Shown here: one piece after another, positions 6,984-57,274 of the stretch
Position numbering within the stretch: the stretch's first letter is position 1
Layout of the letters: every line of letters begins with the position of its first letter
Virus record (IMG/VR): IMGVR_UViG_3300030503_000315
Span: 62,001-126,000 of that record
Direction: 5' to 3' (one strand)
Length of the DNA: 64,000 bases
Made by a program: the position numbers and the translations under genes
The notes under the pieces: model-generated
Told to the model about the DNA's origin: nothing
The model's database searches: none
Seen by the model: only the letters and a program-made list of their open reading frames with translations

Positions 6984-8411
6984 GATCCTCTCCCTCGAAT
7001 TTAGCATACTCACCATCCTCCCACTTACCACGTATGAAGGCGGCGCAGTCAAGAAGATACTCTCGGCGCTTCTCATGATAATGTGCGGCCTTCGGCATAT
7101 CAGAAGCATCCGCACAAGTCTCCTGATATGAGTGATAGTCGGCCAGAGCCTCTAAAGCTCCCGGGAGTTCCGTTAACATCTTGAACTCTGTAGCAGAGAA
7201 TTCAGGTCGTTTCATCACCTACCTCCATATTTCCTTTGAACACGTATCCATACTTTTCCTTGACGCAGTGTTCATCACACCACGCCTGGGCTTCCTCTAG
7301 CTTCCGAATGACTTCGTGTAACCATCCAGTTGATGCACTGCCCTCAGTTTTCACGCTCCAGTTACCATCATCTTCGCAAACGATGGTGAACACAACATGT
7401 GGATCTTCGGCACCTCTCCAACCGAGCGTAACACCGAAACAGGATCCAAAGAATCCGATCTCGTATTTGTGCTCGGAATAATCCTTCCGAAACCAATCCC
7501 ACCCAATGATGTACGGCTTCTTCTGTTCTTCATTCATTTCTATAACTCTCCTCGCGGCTGAACAACACCAAGCCGTTCGAGTATGCCTCGATCCGTGTCG
7601 GTGATATTTACCCCTTCCAGGAAAGACTGTTGCTTGAACTCTTTCATGTCAAGATGACGATTGACACCCTGATTCGCGATATAGTAGGCGAGCTCCATGG
7701 CATGCTCTACCAGCCACTTGGGATTTGCATGACCTAGGGCATAACGTGCAAACCAGTGCAGCAACTCTACTACCCTCTCATGTTGAACATCCTGAGCACC
7801 GTTTATCTCTTCCGGCTTCATGCAACCACTAAGCAGTATTGCCACTTGCTCTTCACTCAAACCAAAATTATCCATTTTAGTCTCCAGGTGGATGAATGTC
7901 GTGAAAGTACGCAGCTTCGAGGACTTTGCGTAATCCTTCCGGCATGTTCCAACCTTCCAGTACGACACCGACGGTGTACTTCATTCTCTGAAGTTTCAGC
8001 AACTCGTCCTTAGGAGCTTCCAGAAGTTCTTTCACTTCGTCCCGGGTAAACGTAAAGCTGTGAGTCATCTTTGACATCAACAACTCGTGTTTCAGTTTCT
8101 CAATCCAACTGAGATTATCTCTCATCTTCTTTGTCCTTCAATAGTTTCTGAAGTTCTTCCTTGTCCCATTCTATGCCCGTGATTTCATCACTGATCCAGT
8201 CAAGTGATTCTTCTAGCCTATGCATATTTCGGATTAGTATCCTTTCCTCGTAAAGCCCACGGCCACGATACGCTTCATCAAGATCCAGGTCGAGATGCTT
8301 CTTGATGGCATCTAAACGTTCCACCTTCACAAGTACCCAACCTTCCGGAATGTCACTCATCTTTCCTCCCAAGATCAAGCGTCTTGTAAACCGTGGATTC
8401 ATCCGAGGCAA
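6973..8411 (-). other. Run of small hypothetical CDS (6973..7218, 7202..7537, 7540..7968, ~7965..8125, 8115..8411)
   Basis: Contiguous tiling with stop/start overlaps. Confidence 0.6.
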
Positions 8412-8604
8412 ACTTTGAGATCATCCGGGCAATTCGTGCAGCTTCATCTGCAGGAATCGTGATACCTTGCTTACCGTGCTGCCACTCTGTTACTTTCTTT
8501 GTCTTATACATCTGACGCAAGGATATAAAGTTAGCGCCATTGATCTCGACAGCTTCAATACGAATTGCTTTTGTGTCGGTTAGTTCAAATGTTTTCTTAG
8601 ACAT
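8353..8604 (-). CDS. PC4/YdbC-like ssDNA-binding protein
   Basis: IRIEAVEINGANFISLRQMY...WQHGKQGITIP matches the PC4 fold pattern; start at ATG 8604. Confidence 0.72.
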   Translation of the reverse strand: MSKKTFELTDTKAIRIEAVEINGANFISLRQMYKTKKVTEWQHGKQGITIPADEAARIARMISKFASDESTVYKTLDLGRKDE

Positions 8605-9113
8605 ACTTTTGACCCCGGATCTTTTTCCATCCACTACCACTTTGGTTTTGAATCAAGGATGGGATTGATTGTCTAAAAGCTTCCTCGACATCATTGCAAA
8701 ACTGCAACCAAACATTATCTCGGAATCGAGCGTACACCGGAGTACCCCATCCCGGGATGTCCCGAGCGTATATTCCACTGGAATTGGGATTTCTACCCAC
8801 CTGCCACTCTTCATACTCTTTGTCGTTCTCAACGGAATGAGAAGTAACCTTTACGTTCCTAGACATAGGTCTCTCCTTTGATCTTTCGCCAAGGCGTGTT
8901 GGCACTATCCTGCCAGGTGCTTTTTACCTTAGTATTTCTAGCTAGTTCAACCTCAAAGTAGGCTATACACCAAAATCTTCCAGTCCACCTACTATAACAT
9001 TTACTTGACTCACCAAGAAGATCGCGTTCATAGACGCCTGTCTCTGTAGGTAGTCCTGTCTGCCATCCATCATCAAGGATACTATGACTAGTCACCCGAA
9101 TATTCTTCATCAT
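8597..9113 (-). other. Tandem paralogous hypothetical pair (8597..8866, 8859..9113)
   Basis: Shared (K/R)N(V/I)(K/R)VTSHS...WQ.G.P...G(I/V)Y.RD...W(K/R)KI(R/K)G..YV. Confidence 0.75.
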
Positions 9114-34059: not shown

Positions 34060-34127
34060 CTTTACTCTCCCATAGAAATGAAGAAGGGGAACATTCGAAT
34101 GTTCCCCTCATGCATCACTCTACTACA

Positions 34128-34573: not shown

Positions 34574-36643
34574 TTAGAAAACGATTTTGATCAGACGTGA
34601 GAAACTACCTTTCACACGACATACTACATGATTACGCAAGGTTGAGGAGAAGCCCAGACCGCTCAACTGATCCGCGGCGTCGTCGACCTTCATCTTAGAA
34701 CCGACCATCTCAAACACCTTGCGGTGTTGATCCAACTCTTGCTTAAGGAACTCATTGTAAAATGGTCGAGCAGCCTCATCACTCAAACACTTATCCAGAA
34801 TAAAGAAGTAGTGCTTGTTGCCCGTACCTTGGAATGCTAGCTTGTCAGCTAACGTTTCACCGGTGTTCCAGTGATTCGGGCTGAGCATCAACAAGTTGAC
34901 GTTGTGGAAAGTCTGCGTGGGGATGTTCCACTCTGTTCGTACAGCTTCGGAATGTGGTAGCGACTCGATGTACTCAATACCAGCAGCCTTCGAATACTTG
35001 AACTTCGCCACTACTGCATTTGTCTTTGATGACAGTGCGTTGGGGTGTGAGAAGCGACGCACTTCACCCATGAAATCCATCTCAACATCAAAACCAACAT
35101 TGGTAGATTCACGCTTGCTGAACTGATGAACGAACAACTTATAGATGCCTTCCTTCATGTTGTTCTTGCTCCCGTAGAAAATGTTCTCTACGGGTTCGCG
35201 CGTCTGACCGGATCCTGCATTCATATCGACATCGAGACGACCACCGCAACCTGAAGGACCTTTGTTCCAGAAATAAATCTCATTCCCATCCGGCTCGACC
35301 ATATGAAGGTCAAGGTCGTCGTGGTTGTACCACGCAAGACGGCAGCACAGATCACCGGTGACATTACCTCCAGCATTCTTCACTCGTTCCTTGATACCAT
35401 CCGCAACGTCACCGGTGTAGGCCCAGCTGAAACCATTTTCCCACTTGAACAATTTTCCTGCGGTGGGGTCAACAGGAGCAACCAGAGTCATCAACCGTTC
35501 CCTCAGTCGATTCTCAAACAGCAGTTCAACCGTCTTAGCGTGAGGAACGATATCCGAAATGAACTTCTCAATAGTTACTTCTTCGACCTTGTCATAGCTC
35601 TTGATATCCGATTTGACTCCAGCCGCCAGATCATCGAATACATCCCCCAACATGGCAGCCTTCGATTCACGATTGGCAAACAGAATATCGTCGACCGGAA
35701 CATCCGTGATCTTTGCATAGCGCCGTTCGAGGGCGGACACCAAGCCGAGCTCCTGCAACTTAAGCTTTGCGTTCTCGATTTGCTTCTTCGAAACCAATGC
35801 AGTAGGACGTTTGTAGTTCGGACCAGCAGCCTTAAGCTCATATGACTTTACTGCGCCCTCGAGATCATAACCTTCCGACAAGTCACACAACAGTGTTCCG
35901 ATATTATGATTGCGAATACGTGTAACAGCTTCGCTTAGTTTACGCTCTACAACTTTCCAACCAAATAGTTTCTTCTCTTCTGCATCCAACTTCGCGTACT
36001 CAACCTTCAGCTTTCTGAACTCTGTGATAGCCCACTTGTTTTCCTCACCACGGTAGAGCGAGTTTTGGGAGATGAGTTCAAGAACCGTATCTACTGCTTC
36101 ATCTGTGATCGTATCAAGACCACGGATCAACACTTGCTGCGTTGTGCGAGGTTCATTCAGCTTCGAGGCAATGTCCGGACCGTTGCACACATACTTCGGA
36201 TCGATGTTGACGAAGAAGTGATTCCACTCAATGACAGTGGCACCCTGCTTTACTGGTTCAATCAACTGCTCGAAGTTCTTGTCCGTCCCACAACGACGTT
36301 CCGCATGCAAAAACAAATCTGCGATCTCATGTGACTTAACGAACTTCGACAGTGCATCAGCAACGATTTGATACCCGGGTTCGTCTTTCACTACGACGTC
36401 CCACACACTTACGATCTTGTTATCGATAAGTGCTACTGCATTCCCTATACCACGAATGAAACCCTTGCAGCAACCGCAGTCATGTTCGGTGCGTTTGCGG
36501 AACACTTCATTGGTACCTGCAGGAAACGAATTCAGATACAACTCATACATCTTTTCCTTGTCGAGCTGAACACGATACATACCGTGCTTCTGCATCTTCT
36601 CGAATTGCTTCGCTACTGCGAGCTTGAATGCTTTGAAATCCAT
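34574..36643 (-). CDS. Large uncharacterised phage protein with a YfaP/DUF2135-like domain
   Basis: CRLAWYNHDDLDLHMVEPDG...LDVDMN...PVENI motif; N-terminal HDCGCC metal site. Confidence 0.6.
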   Translation of the reverse strand: MDFKAFKLAVAKQFEKMQKHGMYRVQLDKEKMYELYLNSFPAGTNEVFRKRTEHDCGCCKGFIRGIGNAVALIDNKIVSVWDVVVKDEPGYQIVADALSKFVKSHEIADLFLHAERRCGTDKNFEQLIEPVKQGATVIEWNHFFVNIDPKYVCNGPDIASKLNEPRTTQQVLIRGLDTITDEAVDTVLELISQNSLYRGEENKWAITEFRKLKVEYAKLDAEEKKLFGWKVVERKLSEAVTRIRNHNIGTLLCDLSEGYDLEGAVKSYELKAAGPNYKRPTALVSKKQIENAKLKLQELGLVSALERRYAKITDVPVDDILFANRESKAAMLGDVFDDLAAGVKSDIKSYDKVEEVTIEKFISDIVPHAKTVELLFENRLRERLMTLVAPVDPTAGKLFKWENGFSWAYTGDVADGIKERVKNAGGNVTGDLCCRLAWYNHDDLDLHMVEPDGNEIYFWNKGPSGCGGRLDVDMNAGSGQTREPVENIFYGSKNNMKEGIYKLFVHQFSKRESTNVGFDVEMDFMGEVRRFSHPNALSSKTNAVVAKFKYSKAAGIEYIESLPHSEAVRTEWNIPTQTFHNVNLLMLSPNHWNTGETLADKLAFQGTGNKHYFFILDKCLSDEAARPFYNEFLKQELDQHRKVFEMVGSKMKVDDAADQLSGLGFSSTLRNHVVCRVKGSFSRLIKIVF

Positions 36644-36703: not shown

Positions 36704-36814
36704 TCAATGACTGTACGATACCGCCGGATCCCCCGGGTGCATAAACACGTCAACTACCGGAGGTTGCACTGCACAACCTGTCAGGAACAAAATCAAAACT
36801 ATTGCATATTTCAT
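36704..36814 (-). CDS. 36-aa lipoprotein (below the ORF-track cutoff)
   Basis: Translated by hand: MKYAIVLILFLTGC-AVQPPVVDVFMHPGDPAVSYSH; lipobox LTGC; ATG 2 nt after the upstream TAA. Confidence 0.7.
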   Translation of the reverse strand: MKYAIVLILFLTGCAVQPPVVDVFMHPGDPAVSYSH

Positions 36815-36816
36815 TT

Positions 36817-37995
36817 TTACGCCCTAGGAATAACCAAATGTTGTCCGACTTGAATTAGATCAGGGTTCGGCAGATTGTTACGCGATTGAATCTTTCGATA
36901 CGCACCAGACGATCCCATCTGTGCTGCTGCAATCTTACCCAACGTATCACCTGGCTTCACGACATACGTTTGCTCACCAGACGTTGCTGCAGTTGTCACA
37001 GCCTTGTCGCTAACGAAGTATTTGATAAGCAGCGCTTTGTAATCGTCCGATGCACGTACGTGAGTAATGGCCGTGTTCAACGCCGTCAGCAAGGATTCAT
37101 CAGTCGAACGCACGCCAATCTTGTACGCGATATCAGAACCATCCAACTTCGTGACTGCGAACTTCAGGTCAGTTCCCTTTACCGACGATACCGCAAAGGG
37201 ATAATCGTAGATGAAGGCATCGACCGTACTGTTATCGATTGACTTATCGATAAAATGCGGATCTGCATCGTCTACAACTTGTGCAGCTGCAAGCGGGAAC
37301 TGGCGGTGCATGAATGCCTTAACGTCCGGGTCACCCTTCAGGATGCCGATGCGAACATCCGGATCATTCAGTTGTGCTGGTGTCTTGATTTTCGACGACG
37401 GACCAACGATCAACGAATAACCGAAATCCGTAACGTATGGTGCGCTATACTCGATTCCCTGCACCGGTTGATCGTCCTGATATGTCAGGCCATCCATCGC
37501 AATATCAACGGTGTAGTTGCCGTTCGCATCCTTCACCAACAACTGTTTTGGCACCTGTGCATATTCCGGCACCTCGTGATTCATGTCAACACGAACCGCA
37601 CCACAGCGCGCCGCGAACACTGGATCCTGGAACAGCAGCTTCGCTAAGTCGACGTTGAACCCTGAAATCTGTCCGCCTTCATCGTTGTAGAATGGCTCGC
37701 TTGGATTCTCCACAGACACACGAACAACACAATTGCTCAGGATCGACTTCAGGGTATCAGACGATGCCACGTAGGGTTGGGCTGGTGCTTGCTGTACTAC
37801 AGGTGAAGACTGCGGTGCGGGTGTTTGATTCGTCGCGGACTGACCGAAATCTGTTTGTTGCTGTGCAACCTGAACTTGTTGTGTTGCTGCCTTGTCGAGC
37901 AAACCGAAATGCTTCACTCCTACATACGCTCCTGTACCGATTACCGCAACACCAAAAAGGATGAGGAGATTCTTACCTAAACGCGTGGCTGCCAT
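36817..37995 (-). CDS. Membrane-anchored amino-acid-type solute-binding protein (SBP family 3) fused to LysM
   Basis: N-terminal TM; PFY...GFNVDLAK, YSAPY, DAFIYDYP motifs; C-terminal YVVKPGDTLGKIA...N...PDLIQVGQ.L.IP LysM. Confidence 0.88.
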   Translation of the reverse strand: MAATRLGKNLLILFGVAVIGTGAYVGVKHFGLLDKAATQQVQVAQQQTDFGQSATNQTPAPQSSPVVQQAPAQPYVASSDTLKSILSNCVVRVSVENPSEPFYNDEGGQISGFNVDLAKLLFQDPVFAARCGAVRVDMNHEVPEYAQVPKQLLVKDANGNYTVDIAMDGLTYQDDQPVQGIEYSAPYVTDFGYSLIVGPSSKIKTPAQLNDPDVRIGILKGDPDVKAFMHRQFPLAAAQVVDDADPHFIDKSIDNSTVDAFIYDYPFAVSSVKGTDLKFAVTKLDGSDIAYKIGVRSTDESLLTALNTAITHVRASDDYKALLIKYFVSDKAVTTAATSGEQTYVVKPGDTLGKIAAAQMGSSGAYRKIQSRNNLPNPDLIQVGQHLVIPRA

Positions 37996-38037
37996 GATTT
38001 GTCCTAGCTTGTTGATAGGTTTAACTTCAATGGGTAT

Positions 38038-38958
38038 TTACTTGCCCTGAATAACTGCTAACGCTGCGGGATGCACTTGCCATTTGATTCTCTCGAGATC
38101 GGTCGGGTCAACATTCTTCCACTTCGGATGTCCCGTCGCTTGCAACTCCGGCATCTTGTTCATAACGCATCGCACTAGACTTGTGATCTCTTTCTGATAC
38201 TGACTCTTGAATGCGTACGTGACCAACACGTTGCCTGTCTTATACGTCGAAACGGATTGTTGCTGGAACGGGTATGAGCCAGATGGGATGATCGACTTGG
38301 TGTACAATCCGAATGCGTCCAACTTTGGATTCGAAATAGACACAAGACGAACACCGGATGCTGTGGTGAACATCCCAACAGGTCTTCCTGCGTTTACAAA
38401 CATTGCATCAACCTGTCCCGACTCTACTGCTTTCAGTCCATCCGATTGCTGCAGATTCACTGCATTCCATTGCAACCCGGTCAACGACTTGATCACCTGC
38501 ACCGAAACCCACGACCCAGATCCTTGCACGTCTTCGTCCACGCGTTTTCCTTGCAGATCATTCAGACTCTGAATCCTCGAGTTGGCAGAAACCAACAGGT
38601 GAATCTCCGACGAGAAGAACGGGAATACAACCTGAATCCGGTCCATCATCTTCGGGTCAACGCCTTGCTGATACATGAGAGCATCAAGCTGAACAATTCC
38701 GTACTGCACGTTCTTATCCCCGTAAACCTTAGCCAGGTTATCTAGCGACCCATCACTCACTATGTTGCTGATCGGCGTCTGCGGCGTAGAACACACTCGA
38801 GCAATGTCACCAGCCATCGGGTAATTTGTTCCAGATGGTTGCCCTGAGGCAATGCCAACCGGTGCCGCGTGGGCGTGTGTCAACAGCAGGACAGACAGGC
38901 CGACGGCAACAGCGGTATTCATCGCCGCTTGAATCCAGATTGCAGTGTTGAGCTTCAT
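38038..38958 (-). CDS. TAXI-family TRAP solute-binding protein
   Basis: Signal peptide; IASGQPSGTNY, DGSLDNL, GIVQLDA, SEIHLLV, DLQGKRV..GSGS, VDAMFV.AG.P. Confidence 0.88.
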   Translation of the reverse strand: MKLNTAIWIQAAMNTAVAVGLSVLLLTHAHAAPVGIASGQPSGTNYPMAGDIARVCSTPQTPISNIVSDGSLDNLAKVYGDKNVQYGIVQLDALMYQQGVDPKMMDRIQVVFPFFSSEIHLLVSANSRIQSLNDLQGKRVDEDVQGSGSWVSVQVIKSLTGLQWNAVNLQQSDGLKAVESGQVDAMFVNAGRPVGMFTTASGVRLVSISNPKLDAFGLYTKSIIPSGSYPFQQQSVSTYKTGNVLVTYAFKSQYQKEITSLVRCVMNKMPELQATGHPKWKNVDPTDLERIKWQVHPAALAVIQGK

Positions 38959-39266
38959 TGCTGTTTCCCTTGATTGAGGAGGAACTGCACACCACGATTT
39001 GCTGATGGGTCAGTCTGCTGCACTACAGGAGCCGGCTGCTCAGCTTGAGCTTCTGCTGGCTGTTGAATAACAACAGGCTGTGCGACCTGAGGACTTGGCG
39101 GAGCCGGAGTGTCATCCTCCTGCGTTTGCGCAGGTTGGATGTCCACCACGGGTTCCTGCTTCTTGTCGAATACACCTTTTTGCTTTGCTGCCCAGTATCC
39201 ACCTCCACCAACCACACCAACAATTACCAGAATGAGGAGATTCTTACCTAACCTTGTAGCTGCCAT
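38955..39266 (-). CDS. Single-TM Q/P-rich periplasmic protein
   Basis: MAATRLGKNLLIL anchor identical to that of 36817..37995. Confidence 0.78.
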   Translation of the reverse strand: MAATRLGKNLLILVIVGVVGGGGYWAAKQKGVFDKKQEPVVDIQPAQTQEDDTPAPPSPQVAQPVVIQQPAEAQAEQPAPVVQQTDPSANRGVQFLLNQGKQQ

Positions 39267-39268
39267 GA

Positions 39269-40261
39269 TTAATCCTTCTTCGTCCAGTAATTACCTTTGG
39301 TATATGCAAGTGGTACCGCAGGTTCGAGTTCGACGTCAACAGGTTGAACCTTCAACTGCAGGGTGCGCGAATTCAAATCTTCCAACACCTTCATGCCATC
39401 GTCCGCGCGGATTGCGTCCGTCAGGTTTCTGCCCTTCATGAAGGAGTCGACATCATCCAGGAATGCATCGATCTGACCGAATTGTCGTTCAGTCTCTTCA
39501 GACATGAAACCCATCGCTAGATCACGCATACCTTCGACATCTTCCGATCCACGGAACGCAGATTTCAGAACGCCCATGATACCACCCAGTGCATTCGACG
39601 CCTTGTACTTGCGGACGATAACGTCGATCTTGTAGTCGATGCTATCATTCGTTGCCTTCAATGCATCAAGCACTTCCTTCAGCTTTGCATCCAAAACTTT
39701 AACCTGATCCGCGCCAGGTTGCAATTCCTTAATTGCACCGATTGCTTCAGCCAATTGCATCGCGCGTCCACGAATCTCCGCAGTCTCACCATTATGAGAT
39801 TGCAGGTAATTCGCTTCCTTCTGCAAGCGTGTCGCGTCTGCCTGGAAACCAGCGATGGTCGATTCGATCAATGCTTGCTGTTCCTTCACCTTACCACGAG
39901 CATCACTTGCAACCTGAAGCTTTTGTCTTGCTGCCTTCTGTCGATCCCGTGCCAACCACGCAGGATCATATTGAATGAACGCGTAGGTCAAAGCCCACAT
40001 AGCCCGCTTGTAGACAAACCACACCAGCTTCGTCAGCCTACCATCAAGAATGATACCAACCAATGCAAGCAATATCAAACCAAGGATGATAGCGTAGATC
40101 GTATTCGCAAACAGAGTTATGATGAATGGAAGAATTTTGAAAAGACCCCATCCACCCAGACCCAAGATACCCAAGCCGAAAAACAATCCGGTTGTACCTT
40201 CCTTCGTGTTCCAAAAGGAAGGTCGCTTGAACCCCGTTGGGGTAGTGAGATCATTTGGCAT
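39269..40261 (-). CDS. Inner-membrane protein with a long helical coiled-coil (PspA-like architecture)
   Basis: SFWNTKEGTTG followed by 2-3 hydrophobic helices and about 220 aa of amphipathic helices. Confidence 0.7.
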   Translation of the reverse strand: MPNDLTTPTGFKRPSFWNTKEGTTGLFFGLGILGLGGWGLFKILPFIITLFANTIYAIILGLILLALVGIILDGRLTKLVWFVYKRAMWALTYAFIQYDPAWLARDRQKAARQKLQVASDARGKVKEQQALIESTIAGFQADATRLQKEANYLQSHNGETAEIRGRAMQLAEAIGAIKELQPGADQVKVLDAKLKEVLDALKATNDSIDYKIDVIVRKYKASNALGGIMGVLKSAFRGSEDVEGMRDLAMGFMSEETERQFGQIDAFLDDVDSFMKGRNLTDAIRADDGMKVLEDLNSRTLQLKVQPVDVELEPAVPLAYTKGNYWTKKD

Positions 40262-40886
40262 TTGTAGCTCCCAGGTACATTTGAACCTTCTTCGAAATAT
40301 CGCTATACTTTGTGCTAAGGTTGGTCACGATACTTTTGAAGTCGATGTCGGCCTTACTCAGGTCGACCGTCTTCTGTTGCACCGAAGTCACCAGAGTCAT
40401 CTTGTCTTGCGTTGCTGTGCTCAACTCTTGTGTCAGTTGTTGAATCTTTTGCTCAGCAACGTCTACCTGAGCTTTCGTCTTCTCGAGATCATCTTTCGAG
40501 GCGGTGACGAACTCAGCTTCGAAACGTTGTGCGGCTTGTGCAAGAACGATGCCATGCGATTCAACTGCGGTAATCAGTTCTTCTGGTGTGGCTTCAATGA
40601 TCGCTTGCACCGTACGGAACTTCGTCGGCTCATCCATGCCGGGGACGTTCTTCAACTTTTCCAACTGCTCTTCGAACTTGTTAAAAACAGCGTACGCAGC
40701 GCTGCCTCTGATGTCGTGCTCGATGTCCGCGGTGATCGTCGGTACATCAAGTACACCCTGTGCTGCCAACGTAGTTCCTGTTCCTGCAGGAATGGATACG
40801 GGAGTAACCGCTTTAGTAACCGGTGCAGGTTTTGCTACCGGTTTCTTGTCGTCTTCAACCAGTCCAAGTTTCTTAAGAAAATCCAT
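40251..40886 (-). CDS. Coiled-coil protein, first gene of the envelope operon
   Basis: MDFLKKLGL amphipathic N-terminus, P/A/K linker, long heptad C-terminus. Confidence 0.72.
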   Translation of the reverse strand: MDFLKKLGLVEDDKKPVAKPAPVTKAVTPVSIPAGTGTTLAAQGVLDVPTITADIEHDIRGSAAYAVFNKFEEQLEKLKNVPGMDEPTKFRTVQAIIEATPEELITAVESHGIVLAQAAQRFEAEFVTASKDDLEKTKAQVDVAEQKIQQLTQELSTATQDKMTLVTSVQQKTVDLSKADIDFKSIVTNLSTKYSDISKKVQMYLGATNAK

Positions 40887-40939
40887 GATGTTTCCCTCTG
40901 TTGGTTAATGCTGTACCGAATGCTTGAAGCAAAAGAAAT

Positions 40940-40980
40940 GGGGCACCGCCGTTTGCCGACCATGCCCCAACTATTTACTA
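40940..40980 (-). promoter_or_regulatory. Class B motif TAGTAAATA (40972-40980) followed by a 5' hairpin
   Basis: Exact motif also at 44832, 47236 and 57266; GGGGCA/TGCCCC stem directly downstream. Confidence 0.62.
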
Positions 40981-40989
40981 CAGTAAAGT

Positions 40990-41630
40990 TTACTTCCTCA
41001 ACTTGTTCTTCACCGACATCAAAGCTTGATGCCAGGCGACGCAGGCATTTATTCCTCGTTCGAATGCTTGCGGTGCCTCTGCAGAATCTTGCTCTGTGAA
41101 CCACGGAAGTTCCATTGTTCCCTGCCGACCATTCTTTGCAACTACATGGTACAGACGTGGGATAACATACTTGGCAGGTAGTACGTACACCGCACGCATG
41201 CCGAACGTGTAAATCTTACCTTCAATGTTCGCTTCGACGCTGAAGTCCATGCCAAAACGCGACACCTCGCCGGTTACGATCGTACCTTCCATCTCACATT
41301 CAAACTTATGCTTGTCATCCCACAGCGTACTCATGTTGGTAACTTCCAATCGATTCGCCACGTGGGCATCAACAACTTGAACTCTTTTTCGGAAAATGGT
41401 TTGCAGGCGATGCCTAGTTCAAACCAGCGATGTAACTTGCTTGCCATTTTACGACGGAACATGGAATGGTGATTTCTACAACGTTGCAACTCAAACACAG
41501 TTATGACTTCATCCATAGTGCAAGACTTTACAACCTGTTTGTATTGCTTGAAGCTCATGTTGAATCTCGATGCGAATTCCTCTTGCTGCTTCTCGAGATC
41601 CGTCACGTCACGTTCTAACACCGTATCCAT
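40990..41630 (-). other. Two hypothetical CDS (40990..~41334, 41331..41630)
   Basis: Tiled ORFs. Confidence 0.6.
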
Positions 41631-42637: not shown

Positions 42638-43351
42638 TCAACCACCGCTGACCATATATTCCATCGTATCAAGACGAGTGCGTCGTTTCTTACGCTGCTC
42701 TTTCTCGATCTTGTCGTGCCATTCGCGTGGCGCCGAGTCGATGGTGGGTGGTTCCCACTTGTCCTTCACTGAAGTCTTCTTGATGATCTGATTCGAGGGA
42801 TCGTGAATCTTGTTCTGATCCTTCAACTCATTCCTCTTTTCAATCCACTGCTTGTGTGTCAAAAGGTCCTGTGCATCTGCAGCAAGATAAGAGATGAACG
42901 ACTGGCCTCGCGACCGATTTGGATTTCCCATCAACATCAATTCACCGCTGCTTGTGTAACCTGAAACGAAACCACAAAGGTAATTCGAGATGAAGTCTTT
43001 GCCGATCTTGAAATACAACTTCGTGCCAATCGGCCACTGCGTCTTCTTTGTTTTTGTTCGTAGAAGTCCCAAAAGGACTCGTCGCTCCGAGAACGAAAAT
43101 GATTGGAAAAGGGTTACAACATGAACGAACTCGTCCGAGTTCTTGGCGATCCTCGTGATGTCAGGTGTAAAACACGATGGTGCGATCCCCACAGCTTTGA
43201 TGCCCAGTTTTGAGCAGACCTCTTGTTTGGAAGAATGTGGATGTTTCTTATGGTGTAGGCATTCCCCACACCTGAAAGCTTCGCCAAGGGATTTGGCTGA
43301 CGCTTTCCCCAAAACGTTTTTCTTGAGCATTGGTCGATACTCATAGTACAA
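42638..43351 (-). CDS. Hypothetical protein with an N-terminal Cys/His cluster
   Basis: CGECLHH...C...C pattern. Confidence 0.65.
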   Translation of the reverse strand: MYYEYRPMLKKNVLGKASAKSLGEAFRCGECLHHKKHPHSSKQEVCSKLGIKAVGIAPSCFTPDITRIAKNSDEFVHVVTLFQSFSFSERRVLLGLLRTKTKKTQWPIGTKLYFKIGKDFISNYLCGFVSGYTSSGELMLMGNPNRSRGQSFISYLAADAQDLLTHKQWIEKRNELKDQNKIHDPSNQIIKKTSVKDKWEPPTIDSAPREWHDKIEKEQRKKRRTRLDTMEYMVSGG

Positions 43352-44559: not shown

Positions 44560-44840
44560 GATGATACCTTTTCGATTCGGCTATGAAACATGAAACTATT
44601 TGCGGTCTTTCCCGCCGTCAGACATATCACGCACTTCCGTACTAGCGACAAGGCACAGTATCAACCGACCCTACGGCGAACCACGCCAAGCATTTTGGGA
44701 AGTCCCAAGGAATATCTATGGAGGTGAAGGTAGCGTATATGCCATCCGGTGTTATTTCTGACAGCAGACACCTCCGGCTGGTCTGCTCCGCGGCAGTCGA
44801 CGTTCCACAGCGGCGTTGACTTGTACATGCGTATTTACTA
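44560..44840 (-). ncRNA. Candidate structured non-coding RNA or long leader downstream of a TAGTAAATA motif
   Basis: About 270 nt with no strong ORF; at least five stem-loops. Confidence 0.3.
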
Positions 44841-47235: not shown

Positions 47236-47244
47236 TATTTACTA
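47236..47244 (-). promoter_or_regulatory. Class B motif TAGTAAATA
   Basis: Intergenic, followed by a GGGGA/TCCCC hairpin, upstream of the H1-like gene. Confidence 0.62.
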
Positions 47245-50620: not shown

Positions 50621-50923
50621 CTATCTCTGCTCCAGGCGCTTACTCAATCGAATGTATACCGTCGCGTACAAACCAGTAGGATCGCAGCCGGACGCGCGGT
50701 TCGCAAGCGCAACATTGTCGATGCCGTTCGCAACGAACACCCCATAGTAGTACGCGACCTTCAACACCTTTCGATATCCATCCACGAGAACGTACTCACC
50801 AACGCGTGGGATTGCCAGAGCGTCCTGGATTGTGATCGTTGCTATACCACCGAGCTTATCGCTCATCGGAATTTCGTAGTCTATCTGCATGTCACACCAC
50901 GGTGAGTTCCTGATTATCTTCAC
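50621..50923 (-). CDS. Hypothetical protein
   Basis: Coupled to the topoisomerase A-subunit stop. Confidence 0.5.
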   Translation of the reverse strand: MKIIRNSPWCDMQIDYEIPMSDKLGGIATITIQDALAIPRVGEYVLVDGYRKVLKVAYYYGVFVANGIDNVALANRASGCDPTGLYATVYIRLSKRLEQR

Positions 50924-52412
50924 GATCCTGATACGTCTGATCCTTCAGGACGAGATCGCGAACGCGCAGCACGTCGAGTAGCACCTTCTCTCTTGGTTTC
51001 TTCACCCACGCCTGCAGCTGCTTCAGCAACGTTTGCTGCTCCTTCAGTTTCGCCTTGTACTCGTTCTGGTTCAGCTTCGAGATTTTGCGCAGCTGCAGGT
51101 CACAGACCAACTTCGCCTGTTCTATAGTGATCTTCAGCGCTTTCACCAATGCTGCCTCAGGGTCCTCAGACTTCCGAATCGTCTTGATGATAAGATCAAT
51201 GTGATCCGCGGCGTAGATCATGAGCTCAGAGTACGCTATGTCACGTTCGGTATACGAGATGCGATACGCCAAGCTGCGCAACTCAAGCTTCATCCTCTCC
51301 CGAAGCCACGCAATAATCAACTGCGGAACTGACAGAGCTTCGATCTTCGTATCGAAACTGACAACGCCATCCTCGATGCTGGAAGTCCGTCTCGTCACAT
51401 TAATCTTGAACGGGCGACGTTTGACTGTTGCCTTCTGCACCTTTGCCACAAACTTATCAAACTGATCGAAGTTATACGCGGGCTTGCACACTACAGTGAA
51501 GGTAGTCGAACCTTCGGAGTTCAAGCATGTCAAACACTCGGGCATTTTCCGCACAGCTTCGGTGAACTTCTCAAGATCAGTTCCTGGTGGCCAATCGTTG
51601 ATGACGATACGTTTGCTGTCCCGATCGACCTGAAGATCAGACTCGAACTGTACACTTGCATAAGGTGAGGTGAACAACTGATTCCACTGTGCCTTGTTCT
51701 CTTTCGATTGAACAAGTTGCCCGCCCCAACGATGGCTGAACTTCAGCGTCTTGGCAAAATCCAGCGGCTGCAGTTTCTCACCCTTCAGCAATCTTTCAAT
51801 TACACTCACGACCGACACTGCAGTGAATGTTGGGATCATCGTGTTGATACCCACGCCGATGCCTTCGCCACCATTTAGAATGATGTTGGGTAGCTGTGCT
51901 GGCAGGGTGACTGGCTCGACCCACTTGTCATTGTAGTTGGGAACGAACGACGTTACTTCTTTCGCAATGTAATCCGGCTCCAGAAATGACAAGCCGTAAT
52001 CCGTCAGCTTGCACTCTGTGTATCGATACGCAGCGGCGCCGTCAACCATCGATCCCCAATTGCCACGACCGAAGATAGATGGAGTCGGCATGTTGACCAT
52101 CGTTACCATTGCGCCGTAGATAGAACCATCGCCGTGTGGGTGAAGTTTACCGAGAACGAATCCGACATGCTCACCAGCTTTCTGAATCGACTTCCCACCA
52201 TTCGCCGACATGCCCCAAAGAATGCGCCGATGCACCGGCTTCAAACCATCGAACAGATCCGGAACCGACCGATCCAGATTGGTCGTCACTGCGTATGTTG
52301 TCATGTTGCGTTCGCCAAATGAACGCAACGTTTCATTCTTCAAATGCTTATCTTCTTCCGGCACTAGACTACGTTGCTTGGTCGAGGCACGCTTCTTAGT
52401 TACCATGGTCAC
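50892..52412 (-). CDS. Type IIA topoisomerase subunit A (GyrA/ParC/T4 gp52-like, no beta-pinwheel CTD)
   Basis: DGLKPVHRRILW, HPHGD.SIY, AAAYRYTE (catalytic Tyr), P..LPN...NG..GI.VG. Confidence 0.93.
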   Translation of the reverse strand: MTMVTKKRASTKQRSLVPEEDKHLKNETLRSFGERNMTTYAVTTNLDRSVPDLFDGLKPVHRRILWGMSANGGKSIQKAGEHVGFVLGKLHPHGDGSIYGAMVTMVNMPTPSIFGRGNWGSMVDGAAAYRYTECKLTDYGLSFLEPDYIAKEVTSFVPNYNDKWVEPVTLPAQLPNIILNGGEGIGVGINTMIPTFTAVSVVSVIERLLKGEKLQPLDFAKTLKFSHRWGGQLVQSKENKAQWNQLFTSPYASVQFESDLQVDRDSKRIVINDWPPGTDLEKFTEAVRKMPECLTCLNSEGSTTFTVVCKPAYNFDQFDKFVAKVQKATVKRRPFKINVTRRTSSIEDGVVSFDTKIEALSVPQLIIAWLRERMKLELRSLAYRISYTERDIAYSELMIYAADHIDLIIKTIRKSEDPEAALVKALKITIEQAKLVCDLQLRKISKLNQNEYKAKLKEQQTLLKQLQAWVKKPREKVLLDVLRVRDLVLKDQTYQDREDNQELTVV

Positions 52413-55072
52413 GCCGCCTTCTTAAGTTTGGGTTTGACTCCACGCTTCTCTGCTGCCAGGTCCCGAATTGCGTCAGATATAGGACCGAGTCGCGCAACGC
52501 CTTTCCGTGGTACAGATTTCTTTACTGTTTTCTTCGCTGCGACTTTACGTGGTGGCTTTTCCTGTTCCTCATCGTCCTCTGAAACATCCGAGGCTGAAGG
52601 CAACCCAAAGATCTTCCGGCGATACGCAACGTCTTCGTCCATAAGTTTGACGAACTCGACTTTGTCTTCCTTCTCGATTGCTGAGATTCGAATTAGGCGA
52701 CGCGTCTGCGGGTCGCACGCAAGAATGCGCAGCAGATTCTTCGGAGCTTCCCCCCACCCCTTCAGGTGATTGATCTGAACCGAGGCCGGCGCCTTCAGCT
52801 TCGCCAACTTCTTCTTCATGATCGATACAGTGTCCGCTGTCACCAGTTGCGCTTTGTAGATCGAGTAGAACTCGGGGATCGCCGACACATACACCATCCC
52901 TCTAGCAAACAATTCAGGCAAGTACTTGTAGAACAACGTCAGGAGCAGTGAATTGATGTGGCAGTTGCTTGACACAATACCAGAGGGTAACATGAAGTTA
53001 TGATACCTAGGTACTGTCAAACAGTACACCGGTACGGGTTCGTTCAGATGTTGAACACGCAACTTGCTAACTGCGAAGAATCCTTTGCCCGTCATTCGAT
53101 CAATCAGATCCTTTGCTTTCCCAGTTGCTTCATTTTGAGGCGCATACACCCGATCACCAATTCGCATATCTTCTGCACGAATGTATGCCAGATTTTGGCT
53201 GTACACCTGATAGATACGATCACGCACTGCCGGGGTTCGCACGACCAGGAATTTGTGATTCAAATCGACTTTGTACTTGTGTCCACCAATCTCCATCGAT
53301 ACGAGCGTATCGACATTCTTCTGCAATGAAGCACTTGCAGGTTTCCACTGTAACTCTCCACCAGCCCACACAGGCACGGCGAAGGTTACGCCGGCCTCCG
53401 CAAGGTGCTGAATTGATCGCTGCTGTGATTTGGTGCCATCCAATCCTCCCATCGCAGGAGGTCTGAAGGAAATCAATGTTTCTCCAACGAACGGTCCATC
53501 CGGATCTGGGTCAGCCAGACAAATGATCTTTCCCATAGTCAGCTTCGAGTACGGGTCGGCCGCCTTCGGATCATACCCGATTGCTGCCAGGATGTTAATC
53601 ACTTCCTCAGAATCAAGAGGTGTCTTTTTCTTCGTCGGCTTCAGAGCATTCATGATCTTGCCACGCAACGGCAAGATAGCCTGATACGCGAACCGCGCTT
53701 CCTTTAGCTTGCCCGTCGCAGAATCACCTTCTGTGAGGAAGAGTTCGCGATCATGCACCTTCGTCTTCGGATCGAACCCTGCATATTTTGCAGGCAGACC
53801 CATGCGCTTGACCTTGTTCAGATCAGCAGCGTTCTTCTTCGACATGTTGAACTGATTGCGCGCCTCATTGACTTTCGTCGCCTTGTCGCACAACCTTTGT
53901 GCCATTGCCTTGTTCTCTTTGAAGAACTTTGTTGCTTCGACAATGAGCTTGTCTTCCAGACCTTTGCCCATACGTTCATCCGACAGGAACACCTTGTCCT
54001 GAGAATTGAACTTTGCCTTGTGCAACTTGGCATTGACGACGCCAACCAGACCTTCTTTCAAATCGACTTCGCGGAATACAGGGACGAGTTTGCCGTCGAC
54101 CTTACGTGTCTTGATGTACGGCTTCAATGCCTGATACAGAGCGCCCGTTACTGAGTCAACGTGCTTACCACCCTTGCTATTGAAAGAACCATTAGTGAAC
54201 CCACGAAGGTCGCAGTCGCCATAGTCAGAAAAAGCAACCACGACATCAGCCGCGTGAGGATCCCCATGAACAGACTTGTACTCGAAGATCGTCTTCTCCG
54301 CCTGTGCCTTGAGCTTTGCAAGACGCGCATCAATGTACTCCTTAACTCCAGCCTTGGATAGATACTTCTTTTCGCTTTTAGCTGACTTGATGCGTATCGT
54401 CACACCCGGGTTGAAGTACGCCATCATCTCTGCCCATTCCAGCGCCATTTGCGTCGGAAACTTCGAGCTAGAGAAAATCGACATGTCGGGTTTGCAATGA
54501 ATCAGCGTCCCGGACTTCACCACGCCTTCAGGTCCGCGCGGCGCCTTGCACTTCGACACCGGGGTAACAAGCACACCCTTCTTGAACCCTATGGTGTACC
54601 ACTGACCTTCGAAAAAGGTGTAGACCGTGAAGTACTCACTTGTCGCGTTGGTGCCCTTGCTGCCGATGCCATGCGTCCCGATCGACACTTCATATGCTGC
54701 GGTGTCGTACTTGCCAGACGTATTCAGTGCTCCGAATACAGCTTGCATGGTCGACATCTTATTAATGATATCTTTGCCGTTTACGTGAATCTTTGTCTTC
54801 GTAACCCCCTGTGGTACACCATGCCCCGCATCGCTTACCCAGAACGATCCGTCCTTGTCCAGGTATAGACCGACCATATCATTCCGGCCGGCCAGCGCTT
54901 CATCCAAACCGTTGTCGAGAAGTTCTTTGATAATCATCCACAGGCCGTAGCTATCGGTGCCGCCAATGTACTGGCTAGCATTGCGACGCACCGACTCAGG
55001 GAAGACCAGACTCTTGATATTAGCTGAAGTGTACTTCGCGACTTTCTTAGCTGCTACTTTTTTGATTACCAT
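52409..55072 (-). CDS. Type IIA topoisomerase subunit B (GyrB/ParE-like) containing an intein
   Basis: GHKL motifs ELLDNGLDE, DAGHGVP, GTHGIG; Toprim TEGDSA, PLRGKIMN, DPDPDG; KGWGE. Confidence 0.93.
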   Translation of the reverse strand: MVIKKVAAKKVAKYTSANIKSLVFPESVRRNASQYIGGTDSYGLWMIIKELLDNGLDEALAGRNDMVGLYLDKDGSFWVSDAGHGVPQGVTKTKIHVNGKDIINKMSTMQAVFGALNTSGKYDTAAYEVSIGTHGIGSKGTNATSEYFTVYTFFEGQWYTIGFKKGVLVTPVSKCKAPRGPEGVVKSGTLIHCKPDMSIFSSSKFPTQMALEWAEMMAYFNPGVTIRIKSAKSEKKYLSKAGVKEYIDARLAKLKAQAEKTIFEYKSVHGDPHAADVVVAFSDYGDCDLRGFTNGSFNSKGGKHVDSVTGALYQALKPYIKTRKVDGKLVPVFREVDLKEGLVGVVNAKLHKAKFNSQDKVFLSDERMGKGLEDKLIVEATKFFKENKAMAQRLCDKATKVNEARNQFNMSKKNAADLNKVKRMGLPAKYAGFDPKTKVHDRELFLTEGDSATGKLKEARFAYQAILPLRGKIMNALKPTKKKTPLDSEEVINILAAIGYDPKAADPYSKLTMGKIICLADPDPDGPFVGETLISFRPPAMGGLDGTKSQQRSIQHLAEAGVTFAVPVWAGGELQWKPASASLQKNVDTLVSMEIGGHKYKVDLNHKFLVVRTPAVRDRIYQVYSQNLAYIRAEDMRIGDRVYAPQNEATGKAKDLIDRMTGKGFFAVSKLRVQHLNEPVPVYCLTVPRYHNFMLPSGIVSSNCHINSLLLTLFYKYLPELFARGMVYVSAIPEFYSIYKAQLVTADTVSIMKKKLAKLKAPASVQINHLKGWGEAPKNLLRILACDPQTRRLIRISAIEKEDKVEFVKLMDEDVAYRRKIFGLPSASDVSEDDEEQEKPPRKVAAKKTVKKSVPRKGVARLGPISDAIRDLAAEKRGVKPKLKKAA
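52964..53494 (-). mobile_element. 177-aa mini-intein (Hint domain, no homing endonuclease), class-3-like
   Basis: Begins PFVGETL, block B DLNHKF, block F VYCLTV, ends GIVSSN followed by +1 Cys; removal restores DPDPDG-CHINSLL. Confidence 0.88.
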
Positions 55073-57265: not shown

Positions 57266-57274
57266 TATTTACTA
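57266..57274 (-). promoter_or_regulatory. Class B motif TAGTAAATA
   Basis: About 80 nt upstream of the poly-Glu gene, followed by hairpins. Confidence 0.6.

What the first reader, a model, noticed from the sequence alone, without database searches (positions are those of the whole stretch)
36704..40980. Phage envelope operon with two different periplasmic ligand-binding proteins but no transporter: a candidate sensing or membrane-protection system
Seen, behind one TAGTAAATA motif and 5' hairpin, in coupled order: a coiled-coil protein (40251), a multi-TM long coiled-coil protein with PspA-like architecture (39269), a TM-anchored Q/P stalk (38955), a secreted TAXI SBP (38038), a TM-anchored amino-acid SBP fused to peptidoglycan-binding LysM (36817), and a 36-aa lipoprotein (36704). 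No permease, TRAP membrane subunit or ABC ATPase is present. Known: SBPs normally serve transporters or receptors, PspA/ESCRT-III-like coils repair membranes, and LysM tethers to peptidoglycan. Inference: a trans-envelope complex that senses or sequesters small molecules or stabilises the infected cell's inner membrane (superinfection exclusion, lysis timing, or blocking a metabolite-triggered defence), rather than simple nutrient uptake.
Basis: partly seen in the sequence, partly recalled or inferred. Interest (0 to 1): 0.8.

Follow-up and report, generated by a model that had tools for sequence, protein, structure and literature searches.

The report
Phage PspA-like envelope module, transporter lost
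A giant peat-soil phage carries a membrane-anchored relative of the bacterial membrane-repair protein PspA. Next to it are two solute-binding proteins tethered in the periplasm; this is a stripped-down version, without its own transporter, of an untested gene module common in phages and bacteria.

Summary
Six tightly coupled minus-strand ORFs (36704-40886) encode:
- a soluble coiled-coil protein;
- a protein with a two-helix membrane hairpin and a long coil;
- a membrane-anchored P/Q-rich stalk;
- a secreted TAXI binding protein;
- a membrane-anchored SBP_bac_3-LysM protein;
- a 36-aa lipobox ORF, which is not conserved in relatives.

No permease or ABC ATPase lies in the 64-kb window.

The 330-aa protein belongs to a large unnamed family (1,288 clusters at 50% identity). 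The family is distantly PspA/IM30-like:
- 24 of 93 members hit Pfam PspA_IM30 below its threshold.
- The best Foldseek matches are all Vipp1/PspA.

The absence of a transporter is lineage-specific. In 46 of 48 phage loci found through the permease alone, the same coil pair precedes an OmpA-fused binding protein, an ABC permease and an ABC ATPase, often followed by stalk and TAXI genes. The coil pair also stands alone in core Emticicia chromosomes. The three-gene SBP3-LysM form sits among ordinary cellular genes in a betaproteobacterial genome.

All periplasmic parts share one glycine-rich membrane anchor, and in two phages that anchor is fused to TAXI.

Operons of this class were described by Ravi et al. 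2024 and by Yuan and Chen 2026, so this is a new variant of a known, untested kind. The mechanism remains inferred.

The parts
40972..40980 (-). TAGTAAATA promoter-like motif, 86 nt upstream of the first start codon
   Evidence: Four copies, all on the minus strand in intergenic DNA 60-110 nt upstream of start codons; 0.14 copies expected by chance. Promoter function is inferred.
40929..40969 (-). Stable GC-rich hairpin followed by a U-tract; either a terminator for the upstream gene 40990-41361 or a 5'-UTR hairpin
   Evidence: Minimum free energy -25.8 kcal/mol, z -3.5 against shuffles. The other three motif sites have no significant hairpin.
40251..40886 (-). coilA: soluble 211-aa coiled-coil partner. 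It has a short amphipathic N-terminal motif (FLxKL type), a P/A-rich linker and a C-terminal coil.
   Evidence: Sits directly upstream of the PspA-like gene in nearly every locus inspected. Homologous to the RsoM2USA, L003 and L005 partners. No Pfam or PDB family beyond generic coils.
39269..40261 (-). PspAL: 330-aa protein with a membrane hairpin (26-44, 54-72), an amphipathic helix (75-95), a near-invariant D99-P100, and then a PspA/IM30-like helical hairpin
   Evidence: Family of 1,288 clusters at 50% identity. 24 of 93 members hit PF04012, in a consistent register. AlphaFold2 model pLDDT 77.5. Top Foldseek PDB hits are all Vipp1/PspA.
38955..39266 (-). Stalk: 103-aa protein made of a membrane anchor, a P/Q-rich linker and a conserved C-terminal peptide (G-V-Q-F-L-L-N-Q-G-K type)
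   Evidence: Always precedes TAXI. The anchor matches that of the SBP3-LysM protein. The C-terminal motif is conserved in 10 phages. In L021 and L031 the anchor and linker are fused to TAXI.
38038..38958 (-). Secreted TAXI-family solute-binding protein with a signal peptide ending AHA|AP
   Evidence: Pfam NMT1_3 2.7e-23. TIGR02122 above its cut-off. Structure TM 0.84-0.89 to TAXI clusters. 56-99% identical across the 120 listed relatives. No large polytopic permease in 28 TAXI loci.
36817..37995 (-). 392-aa protein: membrane anchor, Q/P linker, SBP_bac_3 domain and a C-terminal LysM domain that binds peptidoglycan
   Evidence: Pfam. Closest PDB relatives are AncCDT-1 and LAO-type binding proteins. 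Occupies the position held by the NMT1-OmpA binding protein in relatives. Subfamily members are 44-71% identical.
36704..36814 (-). 36-aa ORF with an L-T-G-C lipobox; a doubtful and unconserved accessory
   Evidence: LPAM_1 E 0.034. Rz-like spanin PHROG E 0.0047. No counterpart downstream in the eight relatives' loci inspected: L001, L003, L004, L011, L012, L072, L077, L078.

Best explanation
The cassette is a phage-borne, transporter-less derivative of a widespread envelope module found in both bacteria and phages.

The core of the module is a soluble coiled-coil protein (coilA) plus a PspA/IM30-like (ESCRT-III superfamily) protein. A membrane hairpin holds the latter on the cytoplasmic face of the inner membrane.

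In most relatives this pair is co-transcribed with a NitT/TauT-type ABC importer. The importer's binding protein is membrane-anchored at its N-terminus and tied to peptidoglycan by a C-terminal OmpA-like domain. A second tethered binding protein, TAXI, often follows; it is held either by a separate stalk protein or by a fused anchor.

In this phage's lineage the OmpA-fused binding protein, permease and ATPase have been replaced by a single SBP_bac_3-LysM protein that carries the same anchor.

Proposed mechanism (inferred, not shown):
1. The PspA-like pair assembles on the inner membrane and preserves membrane integrity and proton-motive force through the long infection cycle of a jumbo phage.
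2. The shared glycine-rich anchors place leash-tethered binding proteins at the same membrane site, between the membrane and the peptidoglycan.
3. There they capture a small molecule. That molecule is either passed to a host importer, or its binding is used locally as a signal or tether.

Shown: gene content, homology, synteny, anchor sharing, and repeated swapping of the binding-protein part.
Inferred: physical complex formation, topology, ligand class, and benefit to the phage.
For: PspA-likeness of the 330-aa protein:
- PF04012 is by far the most frequent Pfam hit among family members (24 of 93, best 7.3e-8; the next family hits 7).
- The hits map family residues ~95-265 to profile positions 22-184.
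- hhalign places the near-invariant D99-P100 on E. coli PspA D24-P25.
- The top seven Foldseek PDB hits are all Vipp1 (E 3e-3 to 4e-2, probability 1.0); the PspA 1-144 hairpin matches at TM 0.78-0.79.
- The RsoM2USA homologue was annotated PspA-like from a Lewinella hit (PMC8504454).

Module conservation:
- coilA-PspAL-(stalk-TAXI) occurs in Ralstonia phage RsoM2USA.
- The identical five-gene order occurs on a 254-kb contig.
- 46 of 48 permease-seeded IMG/VR loci carry coilA-PspAL-SBP/OmpA-permease-ATPase on one strand.
- The module is also present in bacterial genome assemblies.

The pair works as an autonomous unit: it stands alone between CoaBC and YidC/CTP synthase in the Emticicia aquatica type strain.

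The transporter-less three-gene form lies in a cellular context in a betaproteobacterial MAG.

Tree: the window's protein falls in a 100/100 clade that mixes ABC+TAXI, SBP3-LysM and TAXI-only loci.

Anchors:
- They are shared between the stalk and the peptidoglycan-bound binding proteins.
- Two phages have a Rosetta-stone fusion of anchor, linker and TAXI.
- The stalk's C-terminal peptide is conserved.

Prior descriptions of the operon class: PMC11237479 and bioRxiv 10.64898/2026.10.24.761521.
Against: - The window protein itself has no Pfam hit. All PF04012 hits whose bit scores were seen are below the gathering score.
- Profile searches against PDB sequences return only generic coils.
- hhalign probability against E. 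coli PspA is 1.6%.
- Foldseek E-values all exceed 1e-3, and long helical hairpins match easily.
- No evidence of any kind exists for a physical complex, for a ligand, or for expression. No RNA run was listed.
- Anchor similarity within a genome is only moderately higher than between genomes (0.51 against 0.37; the genome's own anchor is the best match in 4 of 9 cases).
- Only 64 kb of a 215-kb genome was read. The search for a permease elsewhere in it used two peptide patterns only.
- The adjacency could reflect co-regulation of independent envelope genes rather than a shared function.
Confidence: 0.55

Rival explanations
1. Plain auxiliary metabolic genes. The two binding proteins are nutrient scavengers that dock on host ABC and TRAP permeases, as cyanophage PstS does. 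The coil pair is an unrelated membrane-stress gene pair that merely shares a promoter with them.
For: Relatives carry a full ABC importer in the operon, so the ancestral role of the binding protein is transport. The SBP_bac_3 and TAXI domains pass their curated family thresholds. The coil pair can exist alone. That PstS serves as a precedent is from my own knowledge.
Against: The coil pair and a tethered binding protein stay adjacent and in the same order across very divergent loci. The arginine that clamps the ligand carboxylate in related binding proteints aligns to glutamine, and that position varies across the subfamily. The 120 listed TAXI relatives are 56-99% identical, and every such locus inspected looks phage-like and lacks a large polytopic permease. 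The three-gene form in a bacterial chromosome has no adjacent ABC system.
Confidence: 0.2
2. A ligand-gated sensor. Occupancy of the peptidoglycan-tethered binding proteins, for example by a muropeptide or a metabolite, is transmitted through the shared anchor to the membrane hairpin and controls polymerisation of the PspA-like protein.
For: All periplasmic parts share one conserved anchor type, and the membrane hairpin is the only constant membrane partner. Transporter-less forms persist in phage and bacterium. The canonical amino-acid clamp is missing. TAXI domains fused to Cache sensor domains exist in bacteria.
Against: There is no direct evidence. The periplasmic loop of the hairpin is only about nine residues. 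Most relatives have a working-looking importer. The pair functions without any binding protein in Emticicia.
Confidence: 0.15
3. A structural tether between inner membrane and cell wall, used for superinfection exclusion or control of lysis timing. The LysM and OmpA domains pin the membrane to peptidoglycan, and the binding-protein folds act only as spacers.
For: Each such protein has both an N-terminal membrane anchor and a C-terminal peptidoglycan-binding domain. OmpA-like and LysM domains are interchangeable at that position. The relative RsoM2USA has a 270-min latent period (PMC8504454).
Against: The binding-protein domains are strongly conserved, with many invariant residues, which argues for a specific binding function. 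No lysis genes lie in the cassette. The lipobox ORF is not conserved. The flanking genes are replication and nucleotide-metabolism genes.
Confidence: 0.07
4. The coiled-coil proteins are not PspA relatives. They are generic helical proteins, such as a scaffold or a YoxC/DUF948-like protein, and the Foldseek and Pfam signals are artefacts of coiled-coil composition.
For: All PspA signals seen are sub-threshold. Many other coiled-coil families also give weak hits.
Against: PF04012 hits 24 of 93 members while the next family hits 7, and the hits share one register. Vipp1/PspA fill the top of the Foldseek list for two independent models. The family D-P motif aligns with the D-P at the start of PspA helix 1.
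Confidence: 0.1

Closest known systems
Bacterial operons with a membrane-anchored PspA/Snf7 homologue, an ABC ATPase, a permease and a PBPB-OmpA binding protein (Ravi et al. 2024, mSystems, PMC11237479)
   Same: A PspA-superfamily protein with a membrane segment sits next to a protein that binds both a solute and peptidoglycan. Relatives of this locus have exactly the ABC ATPase and permease those authors describe.
   Different: Here the permease and ATPase are absent. The binding protein is SBP_bac_3-LysM rather than PBPB-OmpA. A TAXI protein with its stalk is added. No AAA+ ATPase was seen. The constant coiled-coil partner and the shared anchor are not mentioned in the passages of that paper that I read.
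Phage-encoded PspA in huge phages (Yuan and Chen 2026, bioRxiv 10.64898/2026.10.24.761521)
   Same: A huge-phage PspA next to transport genes. [quoted passage not shown]
   Different: Their survey found 189 genes. This family is much larger (1,288 clusters at 50% identity), and most members tested (69 of 93) have no PF04012 hit at E up to 0.05. TAXI, LysM, the anchor and the presence in bacterial chromosomes are not described there.
E. coli PspA-PspBC, B. subtilis LiaH-LiaI and cyanobacterial Vipp1
   Same: Helical-hairpin ESCRT-III-like fold, action on the cytoplasmic face of the membrane, and use of a small membrane partner for recruitment (my own knowledge; fold match).
   Different: Here the membrane anchor is part of the same polypeptide. 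No PspF-like or Lia-like regulators are present. The partners are periplasmic binding proteins. Sequence similarity is sub-threshold.
TAXI-TRAP transporters, including those with membrane-anchored binding proteins
   Same: The TAXI binding protein passes the curated threshold and has the TAXI fold. Tethering it to the membrane by a stalk or a fused anchor recalls anchored TAXI binding proteins (my own knowledge).
   Different: No large polytopic membrane subunit was found in any of the 28 TAXI loci inspected.
Cyanophage PstS, a phage binding protein that uses the host transporter
   Same: A phage-encoded binding protein with no cognate phage permease in the window.
   Different: Based on my own knowledge, PstS closely resembles the host protein and is a soluble periplasmic protein. 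Here the binding proteins are anchored, one of them is also wall-tethered, they are linked to a PspA-like pair, and they are only distantly similar to characterised cellular binding proteins.

Membership tests
PspA/IM30 (Pfam PF04012; ESCRT-III superfamily) | Sequence match to PF04012 at or above the gathering score (33.9 bits) | tested here: not met
   The window protein has no hit. 24 of 93 family members hit at E up to 0.05, best 7.3e-8. The two hits inspected score 17.5 and 19 bits.
PspA/IM30 (Pfam PF04012; ESCRT-III superfamily) | Long alpha1-alpha2/3 helical hairpin fold | tested here: met
   AlphaFold2 model (pLDDT 77.5) has helices 100-155 and 160-233. Top Foldseek PDB hits are Vipp1/PspA; the PspA 1-144 hairpin matches at TM 0.78-0.79 with rmsd 1.8-3.0. 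Caveat: all E-values are above 1e-3.
PspA/IM30 (Pfam PF04012; ESCRT-III superfamily) | Amphipathic helix alpha0 followed by a D-P motif at the start of alpha1 | tested here: inconclusive
   Helix 75-95, then near-invariant D99-P100. hhalign aligns these with E. coli PspA D24-P25, but with probability 1.6%.
PspA/IM30 (Pfam PF04012; ESCRT-III superfamily) | Polymerises into rings or rods and binds or remodels membranes | not testable with these tools
   Needs purified protein, liposomes and electron microscopy.
TAXI family binding protein of TRAP transporters (TIGR02122 / PF16868) | Curated family score and fold | tested here: met
   TIGR02122 123.5 bits against 84.35; PF16868 83.4 bits against 27. 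TM 0.84-0.89 to TAXI clusters.
TAXI family binding protein of TRAP transporters (TIGR02122 / PF16868) | Cognate fused TRAP membrane subunit encoded nearby | tested here: not met
   No ORF in the window has four or more hydrophobic segments. None of the 28 TAXI loci has a large polytopic ORF other than the ABC permease.
Polar amino-acid binding proteins (SBP_bac_3, PF00497) | Curated domain score | tested here: met
   40.7 bits against 26.4. Best PDB relatives are AncCDT-1 and LAO/His-type binding proteins.
Polar amino-acid binding proteins (SBP_bac_3, PF00497) | Conserved arginine that clamps the ligand's alpha-carboxylate (the 'T-x-E-R' position; role recalled from my own knowledge) | tested here: not met
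   It aligns to glutamine in the window protein. The position varies (Q/A/E/P/T) among seven subfamily members.
Polar amino-acid binding proteins (SBP_bac_3, PF00497) | Cognate ABC permease and ATPase | tested here: not met
   None in the window. The source contig is not among the hits to the phage-type permease (a pattern-limited search).
LysM peptidoglycan-binding domain (PF01476) | Curated domain score | tested here: met
   47.6 bits against 20.9, residues 344-390.
PspA/Snf7 + ABC + PBPB-OmpA operon class (Ravi et al. 2024) | PspA-superfamily protein with a membrane segment, adjacent to a protein that binds both solute and peptidoglycan | tested here: met
   The 330-aa and 392-aa genes lie in one co-directional string. 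LysM stands in place of OmpA.
PspA/Snf7 + ABC + PBPB-OmpA operon class (Ravi et al. 2024) | ABC ATPase and permease in the operon | tested here: not met
   Absent from the window. Present in 46 of 48 related phage loci.
Rz1-type outer-membrane spanin (for the 36-aa ORF) | Lipobox, a partner inner-membrane spanin, and conservation | tested here: inconclusive
   A lipobox (L-T-G-C) is present. The PHROG spanin hit is only E 0.0047. No partner gene was recognised, and the ORF is absent from relatives.

The most novel reading that the evidence does not exclude
The module is a trans-envelope, ligand-gated membrane-remodelling machine. Binding of a small molecule or a wall fragment by the leash-tethered, peptidoglycan-bound binding proteins would be relayed through a dedicated glycine-rich anchor to the membrane hairpin of an ESCRT-III-like protein. 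That relay would switch the protein's polymerisation on the cytoplasmic face. Jumbo phages would use this to hold the host envelope together, or to time its failure, without needing any transporter.
Probability: 0.15. Interest if true: 0.85.

Novelty: new variant of a known kind. Interest (0 to 1): 0.6.

Why it matters
The 330-aa family is large: 1,288 clusters at 50% identity, in both phages and bacteria. Most members tested (69 of 93) give no PF04012 hit at E up to 0.05. It is almost always partnered by a coiled-coil protein, and usually by a binding protein tied to the cell wall.

No member has been studied experimentally. Why a membrane-repair type protein should be wired to solute capture is an open question.

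This phage, and the cultivable Ralstonia phage RsoM2USA, offer minimal forms without a transporter. These forms separate the role of the binding proteins from transport itself.

The shared anchor, the conserved stalk peptide and the natural anchor-TAXI fusions give concrete, testable contact points.

For phage biology, the module adds to recent evidence that huge phages invest in maintaining the host envelope.

Tried and rejected
- Megablast of the locus against GenBank phages found nothing.
- PHROG and Pfam gave nothing specific for the 211-, 330- and 103-aa proteins.
- Profile searches of the 330-aa family (9-10 and 93 sequences) and of the 211-aa family against PDB sequences gave only generic coiled coils.
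- hhalign of the 211-aa family against the 330-aa family showed no relationship, so I rejected the idea that they are paralogues.
- hhalign of the family against the single E. coli PspA sequence gave probability 1.6%.
- The first structure model, built from 9 sequences, was poor (pLDDT 58.8). I repeated it with 93 sequences.
- Two scans failed for lack of a sufficiently conserved stretch: the 93-sequence alignment against viral contigs and the permease alignment against genome contigs.
- No RNA run was listed, so I could not test expression or operon structure.
- I rejected the lipoprotein as part of the module, because it is not conserved.
- I rejected the idea that a hairpin is a general feature of TAGTAAATA sites.
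- I did not read the whole 215-kb source contig, because too few scans remained.

Full report
**What is there**

All genes in the 64-kb window run on the minus strand. The finding's six ORFs exist exactly as described:

| Gene | Coordinates | Length |
|---|---|---|
| coilA | 40251-40886 | 211 aa |
| PspAL | 39269-40261 | 330 aa |
| stalk | 38955-39266 | 103 aa |
| TAXI | 38038-38958 | 306 aa |
| SBP3-LysM | 36817-37995 | 392 aa |
| lipobox ORF | 36704-36814 | 36 aa |

The junctions are an 11-nt overlap, a 2-nt gap, an ATGA overlap, a 42-nt gap and a 2-nt gap.

Pfam and NCBIfam confirm the domains:
- TAXI: PF16868 at 2.7e-23; TIGR02122 at 123.5 bits against a cut-off of 84.35.
- SBP_bac_3: 40.7 bits against 26.4.
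- LysM: 47.6 bits against 20.9.

Neither library recognises the first three proteins.

The window also encodes split topoisomerase II, an NAD-dependent DNA ligase and a NUDIX protein. The cassette therefore lies in a replication and metabolism region.

The source is a 215,315-bp IMG/VR contig (100% identity) from peat metagenomes. Contigs from independent samples span the gene junctions with no differences.

**Promoter and hairpin**

TAGTAAATA occurs four times. Every copy is on the minus strand, in intergenic DNA 60-110 nt upstream of a start codon; 0.14 copies are expected by chance.

The hairpin after the cassette's copy is strong (-25.8 kcal/mol, z -3.5). A U-tract follows it, which gives it the form of an intrinsic terminator for the upstream gene. 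The other three copies have no significant hairpin.

The next terminator-like site downstream is at 34084-34109. The transcript may therefore also include the 689-aa and 144-aa genes. Those two genes are not linked to the module in relatives.

**The 330-aa protein**

A profile search of 1.84 billion cluster representatives found 1,288 clusters with E up to 0.001 (940 at E up to 1e-10). Nearly all of the 150 listed are full-length, 300-390 aa.

Evidence that the family is PspA-like:
- Of 93 members scanned, 24 hit Pfam PspA_IM30 (best 7.3e-8). The next most frequent family hit 7.
- The hits inspected map family residues ~95-265 onto profile positions 22-184, but they score below the gathering threshold.
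- With a 93-sequence alignment, AlphaFold2 gives pLDDT 77.5. The model has helix 20-73 (two hydrophobic segments), helix 75-95, and then a hairpin of helices 100-155 and 160-233.
- Foldseek against the PDB puts Vipp1 in the top seven places, with further Vipp1/PspA entries below (E 3e-3 to 4e-2, probability 1.0). The E. coli PspA hairpin matches at TM 0.78-0.79.
- hhalign against E. coli PspA is insignificant (1.6%). It does, however, place the family's near-invariant D99-P100 on PspA D24-P25.

The flanks of the membrane hairpin are both positively charged. This predicts that the N-terminus and the coil are both cytoplasmic (read from the sequence; inference).

I conclude that this is a distant, membrane-anchored member of the PspA/ESCRT-III fold class. 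It does not pass Pfam's formal threshold.

**The 211-aa protein**

It has no signal peptide and no membrane segment. It has a short amphipathic N-terminus of the FLxKL type, which recalls the MinD membrane-targeting helix. That resemblance is from memory and is only a lead.

It shows no detectable relation to the 330-aa family or to any named family. Even so, it sits immediately upstream of the PspA-like gene in nearly every locus examined.

**Neighbourhoods**

- Ralstonia phage RsoM2USA has coilA-PspAL-stalk-TAXI.
- A 254-kb contig has the same five genes as the window.
- A 249-kb contig has coilA-PspAL-SBP3-LysM.
- More distant relatives have coilA-PspAL followed by an NMT1-type binding protein fused to an OmpA-like domain, a BPD_transp_1 permease and an ABC ATPase.

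I seeded a search with the permease alone and recovered 48 IMG/VR loci. Of these, 46 carry the whole five-gene string on one strand, and 13 also carry TAXI downstream. Seeding with the PspA-like protein instead gave 13 ABC-type and 3 SBP3-LysM-type loci out of 16. The permease and ATPase are of the SsuC/TauC (NitT/TauT) type.

The window phage's contig was not among the permease hits. The window has no polytopic ORF and no tblastn match to relatives' transporter parts.

**Bacterial genomes**

A scan of GTDB species representatives found 50 loci.
- The full ABC-type module occurs in assemblies of Geobacter, Fibrobacteria, Chitinophagales and Massilia.
- In Emticicia isolates the coil pair usually stands alone. 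In the E. aquatica type strain it lies between CoaBC, DUF4835 and a cytochrome gene on one side and YidC and CTP synthase on the other. This is core chromosome, not prophage.
- In a 1.08-Mb contig of a betaproteobacterial MAG, the three-gene SBP3-LysM form is flanked by ordinary cellular genes.

**Tree**

I built a maximum-likelihood tree of 102 distinct PspA-like proteins.
- The window falls in a 100/100-supported clade that mixes TAXI-only (RsoM2USA), SBP3-LysM and ABC+TAXI loci.
- One further SBP3-LysM locus is nested in a different ABC+TAXI clade. Its contig ends soon after the gene, so ABC genes downstream of it cannot be excluded.
- ABC-linked forms are the most widespread. This suggests that the binding-protein part has been swapped more than once; the tree is rooted only at its midpoint.

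**Anchors**

The stalk protein and every wall-tethered binding protein start with the same kind of anchor: basic residues, a hydrophobic stretch, a G-G-G-x-Y/F motif, then basic residues. Anchors within one genome are 0.51 identical on average, against 0.37 between genomes.

Stalk proteins end in a conserved short peptide, and the stalk gene always lies just before TAXI. In two phages there is no stalk gene; instead the anchor and linker are fused to TAXI in one protein. The stalk is therefore best read as a separate tether for TAXI (inference).

**The binding proteins**

TAXI is much more conserved than its neighbours. Against the 254-kb contig it is 81% identical, compared with 50% for PspAL and 32% for coilA. 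The 120 listed relatives are 56-99% identical. None of the 28 TAXI loci has a large polytopic permease.

SBP3-LysM is closest to LAO/AncCDT-type binding proteins. The arginine that clamps the ligand carboxylate in those proteins aligns to glutamine here, and that position varies across the subfamily. The role of that residue is from my own knowledge.

**Literature**

- Ravi et al. [quoted passage not shown] They suggested a link between membrane remodelling and solute transport.
- Yuan and Chen 2026 (bioRxiv) reported 189 pspA genes in huge phages. Fifteen lay beside complete ABC systems and ten beside a two-helix binding protein.
- The RsoM2USA paper listed ORF54 as PspA-like.
- I found no experimental work on the module.

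**Verdict**

However, the lack of a transporter is a lineage-specific loss or replacement, not the essence of the system. Sensing, exclusion and lysis roles remain untested.

The cassette is a new variant of a known but uncharacterised module.

Noticed in passing
window 40972-40980, 44832-44840, 47236-47244, 57266-57274: TAGTAAATA occurs four times, only on the coding strand and only in intergenic DNA upstream of genes (0.14 expected). It looks like a phage promoter element resembling the T4 late box TATAAATA. The class of genes it drives is unknown.
   Followed up: partly
window 34574-36643: The 689-aa protein directly downstream (phrog_1735, no Pfam hit) is 50-56% identical to proteins of Caulobacter phiCbK-like phages and Ralstonia phage RSL1, and has matches in 536 phage records. 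It is a very widespread phage protein of unknown function, and it is not linked to the module in relatives.
   Followed up: partly
L002 (Achromobacter phage Motura) 4947-8757: A distant TAXI-like binding protein lies next to homospermidine synthase and glutathionylspermidine synthase. This hints at a polyamine-related ligand for some phage TAXI proteins.
   Followed up: no
L005 and L006, flanks of the module: In ABC-type relatives, NAD-salvage and nucleotide genes flank the module: NAMPT/NAPRTase, an NMNAT-like CTP_transf plus NUDIX protein, NADAR, CoaE and adenylosuccinate synthase. This may bear on the imported solute.
   Followed up: no
L003 11122-14347; L004 10852-13050: An FtsH-like Peptidase_M41 gene and RtcB ligase genes lie just downstream of the module in the two large relatives. 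L004 also has two small PP-binding (carrier protein) genes.
   Followed up: no
window 50892-55072 and 42638-43351: Topoisomerase II is encoded in separate pieces: 887-aa and 506-aa subunits, plus a 237-aa topoisomerase-related ORF about 7.5 kb away.
   Followed up: no
window 37595-37679: One low-depth 151-nt contig in peat run X4 replaces 83 nt of the SBP3-LysM gene with 89 other letters. This suggests a co-occurring strain variant in that part of the binding domain.
   Followed up: no
L116 (Emticicia aquatica type strain) 7096-8966: The coil pair stands alone in a housekeeping region of a cultured bacterium. This offers a tractable organism for finding the base function of the pair.
   Followed up: partly
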